Positions 26,543-33,219 of a DNA stretch of 64,000 nt are shown piece by piece. This DNA comes from Selaginella moellendorffii (Eukaryota > Plantae > Lycopodiophyta), in contig NW_003314304.1 of the NCBI RefSeq assembly GCF_000143415.4, positions 1,416,841 through 1,480,840 on the forward strand. The letters run 5' to 3'. The notes under the pieces are model-generated. The model had not been told where the DNA came from and ran no database searches. It saw only the letters and a program-made list of their open reading frames with translations. Every line of letters begins with the position of its first letter. The stretch's first letter is position 1. Both the position numbers and the translations under genes were made by a program.

Positions 26543-27682
<1,140 letters not shown>

Positions 27683-27787
27683 CGAGAAGAACGATCATGG
27701 CCGTTGAACAGGCGCCCAGGATACAATCAATCGTGACCGTTGAATCTCAGATATTTCTTGTTGCCCGTTGGGGGTTTAGGGTTCTTG

Positions 27788-29140
27788 ATGAGCCCAAAGC
27801 GCGCTCTTGCCAAGCTCCGCAATCTCGCGAAGTGGAACAGGTCCCTCGATCCATTCGATTACTACGGTGTCGTGCGCACATCATTCCCGGTGGAGGTCAC
27901 GGACGAGGAATTGCTCGTGCATTTGCATCGCACGCTGATCGAGGCCAGGGTTGAGGCGGCGCAGCGTCCACGGCCGGAATCACAGTTCTTCTACATCTGG
28001 GACACCGCAGCGTACAAGAAGTTCCAGGAAATCCCATCCGAGAGGCATCCGCTCTTCCGCTGGGTGGAGGAGCGGCTAGAACAGGGCAGGATCTACACCA
28101 CGGCCGAGGAAATGGATCAAGAACAGGGCTGGCTGCCGTGCTCGGTGCGTCCATCGCAGTACGAGGTACGTCGCGTGACCAGGAAATATCTGGGATTCGA
28201 GAGCACTCCAGAGGAGCTGGACGTCGGGCTGGCGGATTTGATCCAAGCGCGTGGCATGAAAGAAGATTTCGTGGAGCGGCAAGGCCTGTTCGTGACGGGA
28301 TCGCGGGTTTTGATCCGAGAGGCTGTGGTCTTGCCCGAGATCTGGATGAGGCTCCTCAAATATTTCGAGGAGAGTTGCTTCTCCAACGAGAGAGTCTTTG
28401 ATCTTCCACAGCTACGACAGGTTTACGAGTGTGAGGGGAAGCCGGCAGAGATGTCGATCAACGAGCACTTTGGGATGGATTTGAGGAAGGATGTGATGCT
28501 CTTCCAGCCCAGCTTCGAGGTCGCGATCGAGAAACTGCCTCACAGCATTCCAGATTGGTGTGACGAGTTTCCAGTGGAGAAGAAATTCTGGGAGCGTCTA
28601 CCCGACGCGGAAGAACGTCCCTGGGACAGGAAACATGCGTGGTTTAAGCTCCACAAGCCGGACGAGAGGAGGCTGGTCTACTGCTGTGACTTTCGAGCTT
28701 ACATGAATCTCAACAACGAGTTTGACGATCCGGAGAGCGAGCTGGGAAAATGGACGAGGAAGTGCCTCGAAGGTGGGAAGCTCTACGTGAGAGACTGGAT
28801 GGTTCCGAGGAGAAAGGGATTGAAGGCCAGGAAGGAGGACGTGGTTGTGGTGAATTCCAGGGGCTGGAAGGTACTCCCTTGGCCGGAGTCATGTCCGGAG
28901 TTTGATAACGAGTATCCAGCGCTGTCCAGGGCTGGCTGGCCGGACCTCGACTACTGCTTCATCGTGGATAGATATTTCAAGGAGATTGTGTTCGTGACCG
29001 GGGATCCAGCCATTGCAAGCGAGGTGGCGAATCCAACATTGAGAAATTCGCTCTTGAGGAGGAGGAAGCATCACTTACTGCACGATATAAGGCAGGTCTA
29101 TAGCTGTGGCAGCGAGCCCGCTCCGGTGGATCTCGGCTAG
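27788..29140 (+). CDS. Intronless orphan protein with two tandem PIN-like domains
   Basis: 450-aa ORF from the first ATG. Internal duplication: FPVE/FPVE, YIWDTAAY/YCCDFRAY, EQGRIY/EGGKLY, LFVTGS/VFVTGD, RQVYEC/RQVYSC. The PIN assignment is inference. Confidence 0.7.
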   Translation: MSPKRALAKLRNLAKWNRSLDPFDYYGVVRTSFPVEVTDEELLVHLHRTLIEARVEAAQRPRPESQFFYIWDTAAYKKFQEIPSERHPLFRWVEERLEQGRIYTTAEEMDQEQGWLPCSVRPSQYEVRRVTRKYLGFESTPEELDVGLADLIQARGMKEDFVERQGLFVTGSRVLIREAVVLPEIWMRLLKYFEESCFSNERVFDLPQLRQVYECEGKPAEMSINEHFGMDLRKDVMLFQPSFEVAIEKLPHSIPDWCDEFPVEKKFWERLPDAEERPWDRKHAWFKLHKPDERRLVYCCDFRAYMNLNNEFDDPESELGKWTRKCLEGGKLYVRDWMVPRRKGLKARKEDVVVVNSRGWKVLPWPESCPEFDNEYPALSRAGWPDLDYCFIVDRYFKEIVFVTGDPAIASEVANPTLRNSLLRRRKHHLLHDIRQVYSCGSEPAPVDLG

Positions 29141-29281
29141 AGACTGGTGAGTAATTTTCGTTTGCTTTCTGCAAAGAAAAAGCTAATCGTCCTTTGACAG
29201 CTTGCTCAAAATTGACAGCGAAACAAGTAAGTCTCCTCTCGATATCTTAAGTTCGCTTGGCTAAGTGGTAAACGTGTCCAT

Positions 29282-31132
29282 ATGATCCATGCTTTAAGAA
29301 GGGAAAGATGTAGACCCGGGCAAGCCGCTGCTCTTTTGAGCTTGAGTAAGGATGACAAGCACGTTTGCCTGGACGATCGTCAAGTAAGCACCGCTGTCGA
29401 CGAGCTCGACAGATCCGGCAGAAGCTGCTCCTACGACACTTACGCTAGCTTTCTACGGCAGTGTGGTGACAACAGGGCCTTGGAGCAGGGGAAAAAGGTC
29501 CACGCTCTCATTTCCCGGGAAAAAGGTCCACGCTCTCATTTCCGCGGGGACAGGTTTTTGGGAAACTTGCTGGTGCAAATGTATGGCAAGTGCCAGAGCT
29601 TGGATGATGCTGTCGCGGCTTTCGAGAGCATCGAGCGGAAGAATCTCTTCACGTGGACGATAATGTTCGCGGCGTTTGCCCACAATGGGTATGTTCTACA
29701 GGCAAGGGAGCTGTTCGACAAAATGCCGCAAAGAGATCTGGTTTCCTGGACCACGATGGTGGCTGCCTATGCCAGCAATGGTTGCAACGGTGAAGCTCTG
29801 GACGTGTTTAAAGCGATGGACTTGGAGGGTGTCCAGGTCGATGGCATTGCAGTTCTGAGTACGTTGGATGCTTGTACTGAACTCGCACACGGTCGGGTGA
29901 TTCATCAGGCAGTTTCAGGGACGATCCTTGAAGACGACGTGAAAGTTGGAACAGCGCTGGTCACCATGTATGGCAGATGCCACTGCCTGGTAAGTGCTCG
30001 GATAGCCTTTTGCGAGATTTTCGAGAAGAACCTGATCTCCTGGAATGCCATGGTTGCAGCATACGCTCAGAATGGATCCCGTAAGCAAGCTCTGCTGGTG
30101 TTTCGCTTCATGGATCTGGAAGGAGTTGGGCCCGGCCCCGTGACGTTTACCAGCATTTTGGAGGTATGTGCGAGCTCTTCCGCTCTGGAAGACGGGAGAT
30201 ATATCCACTCCAAAGCAGTCGCATCAGGATGCCACAACGATGTTAAGGTGGCAAGCGCGCTCGTCAACATGTATGGAAAGTGTGGCAGCGTTAACGATGC
30301 AAAGCAGATTTTCGACAGCGTTCCTCACAAGAACGTGGTGACATGGTCGGCCATGGTTGCTGCTTATGCTCAGAACGACTGTGGGAAAGAAGCTCTCGAG
30401 CTGGGGATTTACATGGATCTGGAGGGCCTGCTACCGAACGAAGTTACTTTCGTCAGCATGGTGGATGCGTGCGCTTGCATCCCGGCGCTGAGACAGGGAA
30501 GGCTGCTTCACGAGGGCATCCGCGTGAACTTCAAGGCTCCATTGGTACTCGAGCTTGACAACGCTTTGATCCACATGTATGGACAGTGCGGGGCCCTTGA
30601 GGATTCCAGGAAAGTTTTCGACAGCATGGGCCTCCGGGACAGCATCACGTGGAACGCTTTGATAACAGCGTACGCTCAAAATGGAGTCCCTGAGGAGGCC
30701 TTGGTTCTGTTCCAGGATATGAAGCTAGATGGAACAAGTCCGTCCGAACTCACCTTCATGAGCGTTCTGTCGGCTTGCAGCCACTCTGGATTGCTCGGGT
30801 ACGCAAGGCAGTGCTTTGTCTCTATCACCGGTGATTTTTTCATGGCTCCGGTGGCAGGTCACTTTCGGTGTCTGATCAATCTTCTGGGCCGAGCAGGGAG
30901 GCTGACCGACGCAGAAGAATTGATGAGCAGCATGCCGTTTGAAGCCAGTGGCTTGGAGCTGGCGAGCTTGCTTCATGGATGCAAGACACAGGGAAGTCTC
31001 AGAGGAGGAGCTCGAATCGCAAGAAAAGTCATGGAAGGCGGGGATCCGGTCGGGCCTTCCTCACCTTATGTGTTGCTATCAAGCATCTGGAGAGACAGCG
31101 ACCAGGAGGAGGAAGAGTTACAGCAGCTATAG
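29282..31132 (+). CDS. PLS-class PPR protein with E domain (organellar RNA-editing factor type), no DYW
   Basis: Intronless 616 aa with repeated LVxMYGKC / SWNAMVAAYAQNG motifs and a terminal HFRCLINLLGRAG...PYVLLSSI E domain. Confidence 0.93.
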   Translation: MIHALRRERCRPGQAAALLSLSKDDKHVCLDDRQVSTAVDELDRSGRSCSYDTYASFLRQCGDNRALEQGKKVHALISREKGPRSHFRGDRFLGNLLVQMYGKCQSLDDAVAAFESIERKNLFTWTIMFAAFAHNGYVLQARELFDKMPQRDLVSWTTMVAAYASNGCNGEALDVFKAMDLEGVQVDGIAVLSTLDACTELAHGRVIHQAVSGTILEDDVKVGTALVTMYGRCHCLVSARIAFCEIFEKNLISWNAMVAAYAQNGSRKQALLVFRFMDLEGVGPGPVTFTSILEVCASSSALEDGRYIHSKAVASGCHNDVKVASALVNMYGKCGSVNDAKQIFDSVPHKNVVTWSAMVAAYAQNDCGKEALELGIYMDLEGLLPNEVTFVSMVDACACIPALRQGRLLHEGIRVNFKAPLVLELDNALIHMYGQCGALEDSRKVFDSMGLRDSITWNALITAYAQNGVPEEALVLFQDMKLDGTSPSELTFMSVLSACSHSGLLGYARQCFVSITGDFFMAPVAGHFRCLINLLGRAGRLTDAEELMSSMPFEASGLELASLLHGCKTQGSLRGGARIARKVMEGGDPVGPSSPYVLLSSIWRDSDQEEEELQQL

Positions 31133-31175: not shown

Positions 31176-32732
31176 TCAGAACGACGTGGCCGCGAGTTCT
31201 TCACAGAAACGAGATAAGTTCTGGAAGGACGAGCCACCGTTCGCGACAGCAGCTCTGGCGACGTCTTTCATCTGCTTGGCTTTTGCCCGAAGCTCGGCTG
31301 CAACTTCGTGATCTTCCATGATCTCCCGTATGATCTTCTGGATCTGGACAGATTTTATCACGCCGCCTCTCTTGGCGGCATTAACAGCAGCGGTGGTGTC
31401 GATGTCGGTGTCGGTGACTTGATGAAAACGGAGACCGAGCTTCCAGTCCTCGGCCATGAGCTTGCAGTTTAAGTTCTGCTCGGCAGCCCAAGGCCATCCG
31501 ACCATTGGAACTCCGCTGGCTATGCTCTCCTGGATGGAGTTCCAACCGCAGTGGGTGACGAAGCATCCTACGGCAGCATGCGAGAGAACTTTGAGCTGCG
31601 GCGACCAGGCAGTGACGAAGCCGAAGTTTCTGGTTCTCTTCAGGAACGCTGCTTTCCTCTGCTCGACGCCGCTCTCGTCCAATCGTGGAAGAACATCCGG
31701 ACGAGCGGCCGTGACGAGCTCTGGACGGATCACCCACAGGAACGGCTGCTTCATGGCTTCCAACGCCTCGGCGAGCTCCTCAAACTGATCCACGGACAGT
31801 ACGGCATTACTTCCGAAAGAAATGTACACTACGGAAGCTGGAGCCTGGCCGTCCAGCCACTCGAGGCACTGCTCGTCTGCCGGTCGCAAAGCTATGGTGG
31901 AGCTGGAGCTGTGGAGCAGGGAGAGCGGTCCGACCGACACGAACTTGTGGCCGAGACGCTGCTGCATCGCCTCAAAGACCTGAGGCTCGAGCTCGCTGAA
32001 AGAGTCGACGAGGACCCAGGCAGCTTGACGTATCAACGGGGCTCTCTCGACAATCATCTGGATCCATCGCTCGCTGGCCGTGTGGAGATACGTGGGAATG
32101 TCAGCCGGGTGAAGTGGAGGGAGGCCGGGGATATAGTCGACGAGGAAGGAGGCTTGGTCGAGCTCTAAGACTGCAGGGAAACAGGACGAGAAAAAGCTTA
32201 GAAGTTCCGGAAAATGAATCGCGAGTGATCGATCACCTGGAACGTGGTTCCTGGAGACCATGTCTTGGATGTGGAACTCGAGCGAGGACCAGGCAGCGCA
32301 GCCACACCAGAGCGCCACTCTGGGGATTCCAAACTTGTCGGCGACTCGCTGCGTCCAGGGGAGGAAGTAGTCGGAGATGAGGCAGCAAAAGTTGGAGCTG
32401 GGGTGGAGCTCGCGGAGGAGCTTTTCGAGTTCGACGTTCATGCTCTCGGCGGCCTCCATGAAGGACACCATGTTTTGCATGCAGTACGCATCGAAGCCGT
32501 GCGGGATGGACCAGTGGAAGGGGATGGAAACGAAGCGAAGTTGATCGAAGGATGGAGATGGAGATGGAGAAGTTTGTGTTGCTGCGTGGAGCTTGCGGTG
32601 GATGCTATCAATGTTGACAATGGTCACCACAACGCTTGTGGAGCGCGAGATCAAGTGTTTGACGAGATTGAGCATTGGAGAGATGTGGCCTTGTCCTGGA
32701 AATGGCATCGCCAGGATGTGAACTTGGGACAT
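31176..32732 (-). CDS. Family-1 UDP-glycosyltransferase
   Basis: PFPGQGH N-terminal motif and PSPG box WSPQLKVLSHAAVGCFVTHCGWNSIQESIASGVPMVGWPWAAEQ. One predicted 66-nt intron at 32171-32236. Confidence 0.95.
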   Translation of the reverse strand: MSQVHILAMPFPGQGHISPMLNLVKHLISRSTSVVVTIVNIDSIHRKLHAATQTSPSPSPSFDQLRFVSIPFHWSIPHGFDAYCMQNMVSFMEAAESMNVELEKLLRELHPSSNFCCLISDYFLPWTQRVADKFGIPRVALWCGCAAWSSLEFHIQDMVSRNHVPGDRSLAIHFPELLSFFSSCFPAVLELDQASFLVDYIPGLPPLHPADIPTYLHTASERWIQMIVERAPLIRQAAWVLVDSFSELEPQVFEAMQQRLGHKFVSVGPLSLLHSSSSTIALRPADEQCLEWLDGQAPASVVYISFGSNAVLSVDQFEELAEALEAMKQPFLWVIRPELVTAARPDVLPRLDESGVEQRKAAFLKRTRNFGFVTAWSPQLKVLSHAAVGCFVTHCGWNSIQESIASGVPMVGWPWAAEQNLNCKLMAEDWKLGLRFHQVTDTDIDTTAAVNAAKRGGVIKSVQIQKIIREIMEDHEVAAELRAKAKQMKDVARAAVANGGSSFQNLSRFCEELAATSF

Positions 32733-33219
32733 TCTTTGGTGCCTCCAATTGCTTGTACGAGTGAATGTGTGAGTGTCTGTGGGTGTGAGGGTGTCCTTCA
32801 TGCAATATATTCACTTTATTTGAGAACCTTACATGCTGGGTATTTGAGGGAAAACAAGTGTAGGATGAGGACATGATCAAATAGTTGGGCGATGTGAATA
32901 GTAGCTCTGTTGGATCGGCTAATAGAGAGTTTGCTCATATTACCATTATCAATTGCAATCTAGAGAGTTTCTCATTTGAGTTTATGGTGTATATTGGATG
33001 ATATATTTGGGTGATCTATGGCAATTAATTTGTTGTTAGCAGTTAACACCATATGGCACCAGGTACAGGTACAGCAGGATTGGTGAAACACATGTCTTTT
33101 CAGGTAAAAGTATGAAAAAGATTTCTGTAAAAGGCACGGGTGTGTGTAAACTTATGAAATCATTTGAGAATATTTTTTTTATGTATGAGCATGCATGTTC
33201 ATCTTGCCACTTTGATGCC

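What the first reader, a model, noticed from the sequence alone, without database searches (positions are those of the whole stretch)
27788..29140. Orphan protein built from two tandem VapC/PIN-like ribonuclease domains
Seen: the ORF is an old internal duplication with five paired motifs. Known: PIN/VapC nucleases show, in order, a beta-strand ending in D (hhDT), a G-x-h-h segment, a helix with an 'hsh(A)D' motif and a final 'hhT(G)D' strand. Copy 1 reads YIWDT...GRIY...VGLADLIQA...LFVTGS; copy 2 reads YCCDF...GKLY...AGWPDLDY...VFVTGD. Inference: a single-chain PIN pseudo-dimer in which copy 1 has lost the last catalytic Asp (TGS) and copy 2 keeps it. It is intronless with a basic N-terminus (MSPKRALAKLRNLAKWNR) that could be an organelle presequence. 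It does not resemble the plant PIN proteins I know (SMG5/6, NOB1, UTP24, PRORP). It could be a lineage-specific RNase, possibly of prokaryotic origin.
Basis: partly seen in the sequence, partly recalled or inferred. Interest (0 to 1): 0.78.

Follow-up and report, generated by a model that had tools for sequence, protein, structure and literature searches.

The report
Orphan two-repeat spikemoss protein, possibly PIN-like
A spikemoss gene with no detectable relatives anywhere encodes a protein made of two anciently duplicated halves that may each be a small PIN-type RNA-cutting domain, but no formal sequence or structure test could confirm that fold.

Summary
The ORF is real and sits exactly where stated: 27788-29140 (+), 450 aa, no intron. 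It is an annotated hypothetical protein of Selaginella moellendorffii (SELMODRAFT_431066 is its allele). It lies between a polyubiquitin gene and a PLS-type PPR gene.

The internal duplication is statistically supported: best off-diagonal Smith-Waterman score 65 against 34.9 +/- 5.1, reached by 0 of 1000 shuffles. The repeats cover about residues 33-215 and 260-440.

It is a true orphan. Word search, full HMMER against 1.84 billion representatives, Pfam, NCBIfam, PADLOC, PHROGs, PDB sequences and bacterial, viral and metagenome contig scans found only itself and its allele.

The PIN reading is unproven.
- For it: the acidic and TG motifs lie in VapC-like order and spacing in both repeats. ESM Atlas look-ups of the whole protein and of the N-half both return PIN-clan clusters (TM up to 0.61 per target).
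- Against or inconclusive: no PIN-clan HMM matches. hhalign and hmmsearch against real VapC alignments give nothing above shuffles. AlphaFold models are poor (pLDDT 42-51) and find no PIN fold.

I rate a PIN-like tandem pseudo-dimer at about 0.4.

The same scan flagged other orphan "PIN-like" genes elsewhere in this genome, with the same unresolved outcome.

The parts
27788..29140 (+). Intronless CDS of the orphan protein (450 aa plus stop). It is P0003; the allele is SELMODRAFT_431066.
   Evidence: frame-specific codon usage
27788..27847 (+). Basic, acid-free N-terminal segment (residues 1-20, MSPKRALAKLRNLAKWNRSL). It could be a presequence or a nucleic-acid-binding tail.
   Evidence: modelled as a helix at low confidence
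27884..28432 (+). Repeat 1 (residues 33-215). Candidate PIN-like core from strand FFYIW-D72. Acidic candidates are E107/E108 and D150 or D160. The LFVT170-G-S172 strand follows, then RQVYEC.
28433..28564 (+). Linker between the repeats (residues 216-259), with no counterpart in the repeat alignment.
   Evidence: pLDDT 22-33
28565..29107 (+). Repeat 2 (residues 260-440). Strand LVYCC-D301, then D336, D386/D388, IVFVT404-G-D406 and RQVYSC. This copy has the fuller acidic set.
   Evidence: ESM Atlas model match to PIN clusters over residues 293-437
28001..28003 (+). Codon of D72, at the end of the first strand of repeat 1. It is conserved between the repeats.
28688..28690 (+). Codon of D301, the counterpart of D72 in repeat 2.
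28295..28303 (+). Codons of T170-G171-S172 in repeat 1, which reads TGS where repeat 2 reads TGD.
28997..29005 (+). Codons of T404-G405-D406 in repeat 2.
27464..27787 (.). 324-nt head-to-head interval shared with the polyubiquitin gene. It holds that gene's TATAAA (27680-27675, minus strand) and its putative 5'UTR intron (27619-27469, minus strand). The orphan's own promoter and 5'UTR must lie in the last ~110 nt.
   Evidence: consensus reading only

Best explanation
This is a real, Selaginella-restricted protein-coding gene. Its product consists of a short basic N-terminal tail followed by two anciently duplicated alpha/beta repeats of about 185 residues.

The most likely reading is that each repeat is a very diverged PIN-like (Rossmannoid) domain and that the two pack against each other within one chain. 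That would mimic the dimers in which PIN nucleases such as VapC normally work. Acidic side chains at the ends of the core strands would hold Mg2+/Mn2+ and cut RNA. In repeat 2 these would be D301, D336, D386 or D388, and D406. In repeat 1 they would be D72, E107/E108 and D150 or D160, with Ser172 in the fourth place.

Shown: the ORF, its coding signature, the duplication and the absence of relatives.
Inferred: the fold, metal binding, nuclease activity, the pseudo-dimer and any organelle targeting.
For: The gene is real:
- A 450-codon ORF intact in both haplotypes, with 3 synonymous and 2 replacement differences and no indel.
- In-frame codon usage like the neighbours, with GC3 0.72.
- A protein-level internal repeat with no DNA-level repeat.

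The fold may be PIN-like:
- Residues conserved between the repeats include the Asp that ends the first strand and the FVTG strand.
- Spacing matches VapC. First Asp to second acid is 35 residues in both repeats and in VapC (D7 to E42). Third Asp to Thr is 16-20 against 16 in VapC.
- A loose signature written after seeing the sequence hits both repeats and 23 of 24 VapCs, but only 0.1-0.16% of shuffled repeats.
- In the ESM Atlas, all named neighbours of the whole protein are PIN-clan families (PF26425, PF01850, PF13638, PF13470; scores 0.82-0.84).
- The Atlas model of residues 293-437 matches a PF01850 cluster at TM 0.61 per target, with 109 residues aligned.
- The N-half alone returns DUF4411, VapC and PIN_3 clusters at TM 0.44-0.47.
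- The strand and helix alternation in both AlphaFold runs fits an alpha/beta fold.
Against: - No PIN-clan HMM, or any other HMM, matches the whole protein or either half at E <= 10 in Pfam, NCBIfam or PADLOC.
- There is no PDB sequence hit.
- hhalign of the repeat profile against VapC alignments gives probability 0.1% and P 0.45.
- hmmsearch --max with VapC HMMs scores no better than shuffles.
- AlphaFold confidence is too low to use: pLDDT 42 for the whole protein and 51 for the C-half. Foldseek and VIA-align find no PIN fold. The best Z is 4.6, to generic small alpha/beta proteins.
- The ESM scores are all under the tool's 0.9 'lead only' line, and both calls count as one source.
- The third acidic residue is not in register between the repeats.
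- The signature is loose enough that a genome-wide reader would meet chance matches. The same reader called several other orphans of this genome PIN-like.
Confidence: 0.4

Rival explanations
1. A real lineage-specific gene whose two repeats adopt some other small alpha/beta fold (flavodoxin-like, DsrE/YchN-like, STAS-like or new). It would have no nuclease activity, and the PIN-like motifs would be coincidental.
For: - All formal PIN tests failed.
- The better-modelled stretch, residues 19-123 of the AlphaFold model, matches only generic alpha/beta proteins at Z 4.4-4.6.
- The ESM structure lists also hold flavodoxin, GDSL, GDPD and glycosyltransferase folds at similar TM.
- The third 'catalytic' Asp is not aligned between the repeats.
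Against: - PIN-clan clusters dominate the named ESM neighbours for both the whole protein and the N-half.
- The order and spacing of the acidic and TG motifs match VapC in both repeats.
Confidence: 0.35
2. A spurious or non-functional ORF. It could be a chance or decaying open frame in GC-rich DNA next to a strong ubiquitin promoter, annotated only because it is long.
For: - There are no relatives in 1.84 billion representative proteins.
- There is no paper.
- No exact copy turned up in any assembly other than the reference genome.
- Structure predictors are unsure.
- With a local stop frequency of 0.033, an open frame this long has P 1.6e-7 per start. That is of the order of one chance case per 100-Mb genome.
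- Haplotype divergence in the ORF (0.37%) is no lower than in the flanks.
Against: - A protein-level internal repeat significant at about 1e-3, with no DNA repeat, needs a long coding history.
- Codon usage and GC3 are frame-specific and native.
- There is no indel or stop in either haplotype, while the 324-nt upstream spacer has 11 gap columns.
Confidence: 0.13
3. A gene captured from a transposon, a giant virus or a bacterium and since domesticated.
For: - It is intronless and an orphan.
- S. moellendorffii is reported to carry footprints of giant-virus relatives (PMC4083422, listed).
- VapC-type PIN domains are mostly prokaryotic.
Against: - No terminal or long repeats flank it.
- Its neighbours are ordinary plant genes.
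- Nothing related was found in viral, bacterial/archaeal or metagenome contigs or in plasmids.
- Base composition and codon usage match the neighbours.
Confidence: 0.07

Closest known systems
VapC-type PIN ribonucleases (Pfam PF01850; e.g. the tRNA(fMet) endonuclease VapC/MvpA of pSLT and Shigella plasmids)
   Same: - Motif order is the same: a hydrophobic strand ending in Asp, a second acid 35 residues on, a third Asp, and a hydrophobic strand ending in Thr 16-20 residues later.
- The core is about 105-145 residues per repeat.
- VapCs act as dimers, which a tandem repeat could imitate.
   Different: - There is no detectable sequence or profile similarity.
- The repeats are longer (about 185 aa), with an extra N-terminal element and an insert after the second strand.
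- There is one chain with two copies, no antitoxin partner, and a eukaryotic nuclear gene.
SMG5-SMG6 composite PIN heterodimer of nonsense-mediated decay (PMC12923823, PMC13182599) and the Regnase-1 PIN-PIN dimer (PMC4772114)
   Same: The concept is the same: two PIN domains work together, one of which may be catalytically incomplete. This is what a TGS copy paired with a TGD copy would resemble.
   Different: Those are two separate polypeptides, or homo-oligomers, of well-conserved families. Here the two copies would be fused in one chain and are unrelated in sequence to SMG5/6 or Regnase. The interaction here is only inferred.
DUF4411 (PF14367) and PIN_3 (PF13470), bacterial PIN-clan families
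   Same: They are the nearest named clusters to the N-half in the ESM Atlas, by features (0.75) and by model (TM 0.44-0.47).
   Different: There is no HMM match to either family at E <= 10. The scores are in the range the tool calls leads only.
PRORP (protein-only RNase P: PPR repeats fused to a NYN/PIN-like metallonuclease)
   Same: A candidate PIN-like nuclease and a PPR protein are encoded side by side on the same strand, 141 nt apart. A basic N-terminus is compatible with organelle import.
   Different: - They are separate ORFs with stops in every frame between them.
- The order is nuclease then PPR, the reverse of PRORP.
- The PPR is a PLS-type protein.
- There is no NYN HMM match.
- PPR genes are very numerous in Selaginella, so the adjacency may be chance.

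Membership tests
PIN domain-like superfamily (Matelska et al. 2017, PMC5499597) | Rossmannoid alpha/beta/alpha sandwich with a central sheet of five parallel strands | tested here: inconclusive
   AlphaFold models are too poor to judge: pLDDT 42 and 51. Foldseek and VIA-align found no PIN match. The ESM Atlas's own model matches PIN clusters at TM 0.61 and 0.55 for the C-half and 0.44-0.47 for the N-half.
PIN domain-like superfamily (Matelska et al. 2017, PMC5499597) | Conserved acidic residues at the C-terminal ends of the core strands, forming one metal-binding site | tested here: inconclusive
   Candidates are present in PIN-like order and spacing: D72/E107-108/D150 or D160/S172 and D301/D336/D386-388/D406. 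Whether they cluster in 3D could not be tested. The third Asp is not in register between the repeats.
PIN domain-like superfamily (Matelska et al. 2017, PMC5499597) | Significant sequence or profile match to a family of the clan | tested here: not met
   There were no hits at E <= 10 in Pfam, NCBIfam or PADLOC for the whole protein or the halves, and PHROGs gave only one chance-level hit (E 0.16) to a family of unknown function. hhalign against VapC gave P 0.45. The VapC HMM scored no better than shuffles.
PIN domain-like superfamily (Matelska et al. 2017, PMC5499597) | Divalent-metal-dependent nuclease activity | not testable with these tools
   This needs a purified-protein assay.
VapC toxin of a type II toxin-antitoxin pair | A single PIN domain of about 130-150 aa, encoded directly downstream of a small VapB/AbrB-type antitoxin gene | tested here: not met
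   The protein is 450 aa with two repeats. The upstream neighbour is a divergent polyubiquitin gene and there is no small partner ORF. Real VapC loci fetched for comparison all have vapB directly upstream.
PRORP / NYN metallonucleases | A NYN domain fused C-terminally to PPR repeats in one polypeptide | tested here: not met
   There is no NYN or PPR_long match in the orphan. The PPR gene is a separate downstream ORF with stops in all frames between them.

The most novel reading that the evidence does not exclude
A lycophyte-specific, single-chain tandem PIN nuclease. One degenerate and one complete active site would be fused into an intramolecular pseudo-dimer. It might be imported into an organelle and work with, or even be transcribed together with, the PPR protein encoded 141 nt downstream. 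That would be a split, reversed analogue of PRORP, giving PPR-guided RNA cleavage. The other orphan 'PIN-like' genes flagged in this genome might then belong to one fast-evolving Selaginella nuclease family.
Probability: 0.07. Interest if true: 0.7.

Novelty: new variant of a known kind. Interest (0 to 1): 0.42.

Why it matters
If the PIN reading holds, this would be the first single-chain tandem PIN architecture that I could find; a full-text search for 'tandem PIN domains' gave no occurrence. It would be a natural fused version of the PIN-PIN composite sites recently shown for SMG5-SMG6. It occurs in a plant lineage known for extreme organellar RNA processing.

If the reading fails, the gene is still a clean example of an old gene: it has an anciently duplicated domain yet no detectable kin in 1.84 billion protein representatives. 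That bears on how 'orphan' genes arise by divergence rather than de novo.

As it stands, the gene is an annotated hypothetical protein with an untested, plausible function.

Tried and rejected
- Pfam, NCBIfam and PADLOC on the whole protein and both halves gave nothing, and PHROGs gave only one chance-level hit to a family of unknown function at E 0.16.
- PDB sequence searches with the whole protein, each repeat and a two-repeat profile gave nothing, or chance hits at E ~1.
- The word search with the whole protein and with the repeat profile found only itself.
- Full phmmer found itself plus P0002, a 2962-aa RTX-type repeat protein. Its ten weak stretches add up by repetition, so I rejected it as chance.
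- Scans of bacterial/archaeal genomes, viral contigs and metagenomes, and tblastn against plasmids, found nothing.
- AlphaFold of the whole protein (pLDDT 42) and of the C-half with the N-half as its only alignment row (pLDDT 51) gave models that were not usable. Foldseek gave no hit below E 0.6. VIA-align gave no Z >= 2 for the C-half and a best Z of 4.6 to generic folds for residues 19-123.
- I tried to build a broad PIN profile for a targeted test. The word search and the genome scan returned only VapC(fMet) relatives of 71% identity or more. The plasmid tblastn reached down to 41%. Eight of those were added to the profile, and there was still no signal. I could not obtain alignments of DUF4411, PIN_3 or PIN_halo, the families the ESM Atlas pointed to.
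- TE or retrogene origin: there are no flanking repeats and no poly(A) remnant.
- Spliced fusion to the PPR gene: there is no good donor before the stop, and stops lie in all frames between the genes.
- Rfam found nothing between 26000 and 31500.
- A literature search by locus names gave no paper.

Full report
**What is there**

The window is from Selaginella moellendorffii scaffold GL377608.1. The ORF 27788-29140 (+) encodes 450 residues from its first ATG. It equals protein P0003.

The allele on the second haplotype scaffold GL377709.1 is SELMODRAFT_431066 / XP_002992932 / UniProt D8TBD1, named only 'hypothetical' or 'uncharacterized'. The alleles differ at 5 of 1353 nt: three synonymous changes, I70V and R270S, with no indel. 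This divergence (0.37%) is in the range of the neighbouring genes (0.5-1.0%), so it says little about selection.

The gene order is the same on both haplotypes:
- polyubiquitin, 26543-27463, minus strand
- the orphan ORF, plus strand
- a PLS-type PPR gene, 29282-31132, plus strand
- a UDP-glycosyltransferase, 31176-32801, minus strand

No Rfam family, no long ORF on the opposite strand and no flanking terminal repeats compete for the stretch.

**Is it coding?**

A 466-codon open frame has P about 1.6e-7 per start at the local stop-codon frequency. Over a ~100-Mb genome that is of the order of one chance case, so length alone does not settle it. Other evidence favours a coding gene:
- In-frame codon usage resembles the four neighbouring genes (cosine 0.875 against 0.66 and 0.72 for the other two frames).
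- GC at codon positions 1/2/3 is 0.57/0.39/0.72, as in the neighbours.
- The internal repeat exists at protein level only.

I found no direct evidence of expression. The exact protein is on record only from the reference assembly, and no paper names it.

**The duplication**

A shuffle test at that split reached the observed score in 10 of 2000.
- Letting the split point float, the best Smith-Waterman score is 65 against 34.9 +/- 5.1, reached by 0 of 1000 shuffles. With BLOSUM45 it is 86 against 48.4 +/- 7.9, reached by 1 of 2000.
- Conserved between the repeats are P-E before the first strand, Y..D..AY, L..W....LE.G..Y, FVTG, E.V..P, LL and RQVY.C.
- There is no DNA-level repeat in register, so the duplication is old.

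**Relatives**

None were found.
- The word search of 5.8 billion clusters found only itself. The repeat profile found nothing among shorter proteins.
- HMMER against all 1.84 billion representatives found itself and one 2962-aa RTX-type repeat protein at E 1e-4. That hit's ten weak stretches are a repeat-summed artefact.
- Pfam, NCBIfam and PADLOC gave nothing at E <= 10 for the whole protein or for either half, and PHROGs gave only one chance-level hit (E 0.16) to a family of unknown function.
- PDB sequences gave nothing.
- Plasmids, bacterial/archaeal species genomes, viral contigs and metagenome contigs gave nothing.

An old duplicated domain with no kin suggests fast divergence or thin sampling of lycophytes rather than de novo birth.

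**The PIN hypothesis: evidence for**

By established knowledge (PMC5499597), PIN-like domains are five-stranded parallel alpha/beta/alpha sandwiches with acidic residues at the C-terminal ends of the strands. The real VapC alignment made here (A2) shows D7, E42, D98 and a VT114NN strand.

The orphan compares as follows:

| Feature | Repeat 1 | Repeat 2 | VapC |
|---|---|---|---|
| First Asp | FFYIW-D72 | LVYCC-D301 | D7 |
| Second acid | E107 | D336 | E42 |
| First Asp to second acid | 35 | 35 | 35 |
| Third Asp | D150 | D386/D388 | D98 |
| Third Asp to Thr | 20 | 18/16 | 16 |
| Thr strand | LFVT170-G-S172 | IVFVT404-G-D406 | VT114NN |

A loose signature written after seeing the sequence hits both repeats and 23 of 24 VapCs, but only 5 and 8 of 5000 shuffles of each repeat. 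It is post hoc, and loose enough to give dozens of chance hits across a plant proteome.

Independent of the motifs, the ESM Atlas places the whole protein nearest to clusters whose named families are all of the PIN clan: PIN_halo, PIN, PIN_4 and PIN_3, at scores 0.82-0.84. Its own model of residues 293-437 matches a PF01850 cluster at TM 0.61 per target. The N-half alone returns DUF4411 by features (0.75), and VapC, PIN_3 and DUF4411 by structure at TM 0.44-0.47. The tool itself rates such scores as leads only, and both calls are one source.

**The PIN hypothesis: evidence against or inconclusive**

- No PIN-clan HMM matched.
- I fetched a real VapC from pSLT. I collected relatives by word search, genome scan and plasmid tblastn, reaching down to 41% identity.
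- hhalign of the repeat profile against these alignments gave probability 0.1% and P 0.45.
- hmmsearch --max gave no score for repeat 1 and -2.3 bits for repeat 2, which 282 of 1000 shuffles reached.
- These profiles cover only one VapC subfamily. I could not obtain alignments of the families the ESM Atlas named.
- AlphaFold without relatives gave pLDDT 42 for the whole protein. With the N-half as the only alignment row, the C-half gave pLDDT 51.
- Foldseek found nothing below E 0.6. VIA-align found no Z >= 2 for the C-half model. For residues 19-123 of the full model it found only generic small alpha/beta proteins at Z <= 4.6.
- The strand and helix alternation in both models fits an alpha/beta fold but is not specific.
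- The third acidic residue is ambiguous.

- 'Copy 1 lost the last catalytic Asp' does not imply inactivity. The active tRNA(fMet) endonucleases have invariant Asn at that place (VTNN).
- The N-terminus is basic and acid-free but only ordinarily amphipathic. Organelle import is possible but not shown.
- Nothing supports a prokaryotic origin.

**Context**

- The polyubiquitin gene has a TATAAA at 27680-27675 and a consensus 5'UTR intron (27619-27469) on the minus strand. The orphan's ATG lies only ~110 nt from that TATA box, so the two genes are head to head.
- Downstream, a GTGAGT lies 7 nt after the stop, and the PPR start is 141 nt away with stops in all frames between. A shared transcript is conceivable but untested.
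- PPR genes are very numerous in this genome, so the adjacency may be chance.

**Earlier notes of this scan**

Three notes describe other orphan 'PIN-like' genes elsewhere in this genome. Follow-up agents reached the same unresolved verdict. I could not fetch those sequences to test kinship.

**Verdict**

- The duplication and the orphan status hold.
- The PIN fold remains a reasonable but unproven hypothesis (about 0.4).
- Another alpha/beta fold is about as likely (0.35).
- A non-functional ORF is less likely (0.13).

No human sequence and no broken toxin gene was involved.

Noticed in passing
window 27464-27680 (minus strand): The polyubiquitin gene shows the classic plant layout by consensus. 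A TATAAA lies at 27680-27675. A short leader exon is followed by a GTGAGT donor at 27619. An acceptor AG at 27470-27469 sits 5 nt before the ATG, giving a ~151-nt 5'UTR intron. The TATA box is only ~110 nt from the orphan's ATG.
   Followed up: partly
window 26543-27463; L001:1535-2683: The two haplotypes carry different numbers of ubiquitin units: 306 aa (4 units) here against 382 aa (5 units) on GL377709.1.
   Followed up: no
window 29489-29544: There is a 28-nt tandem duplication (96% identical copies) inside the 5' part of the PPR reading frame. The other haplotype lacks 15 nt there, so the N-terminal region of this PPR protein is polymorphic (616 against 611 aa).
   Followed up: partly
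window 29141-29281: A consensus splice donor GTGAGT lies at 29147, 7 nt after the orphan's stop. Candidate acceptors lie at 29200 and 29218, and the PPR ATG is only 141 nt downstream. This could be a UTR intron or a shared transcript. It was not testable here.
   Followed up: partly
window 27697-27699: An out-of-frame upstream ATG, in the frame of the 102-aa ORF 27646-27954, overlaps the orphan's start. It would act as an upstream ORF if transcription starts before it.
   Followed up: no
same genome, other pieces (notes s1-346891, s1-419410, s1-433223): Other orphan genes of S. moellendorffii were also read as VapC/PIN-like, and follow-up agents likewise could not confirm the fold. This may be a fast-evolving family or a reader bias.
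   Followed up: no
Its GC3 is 0.46, clearly lower than the 0.61-0.74 of the genes around the orphan.
   Followed up: no
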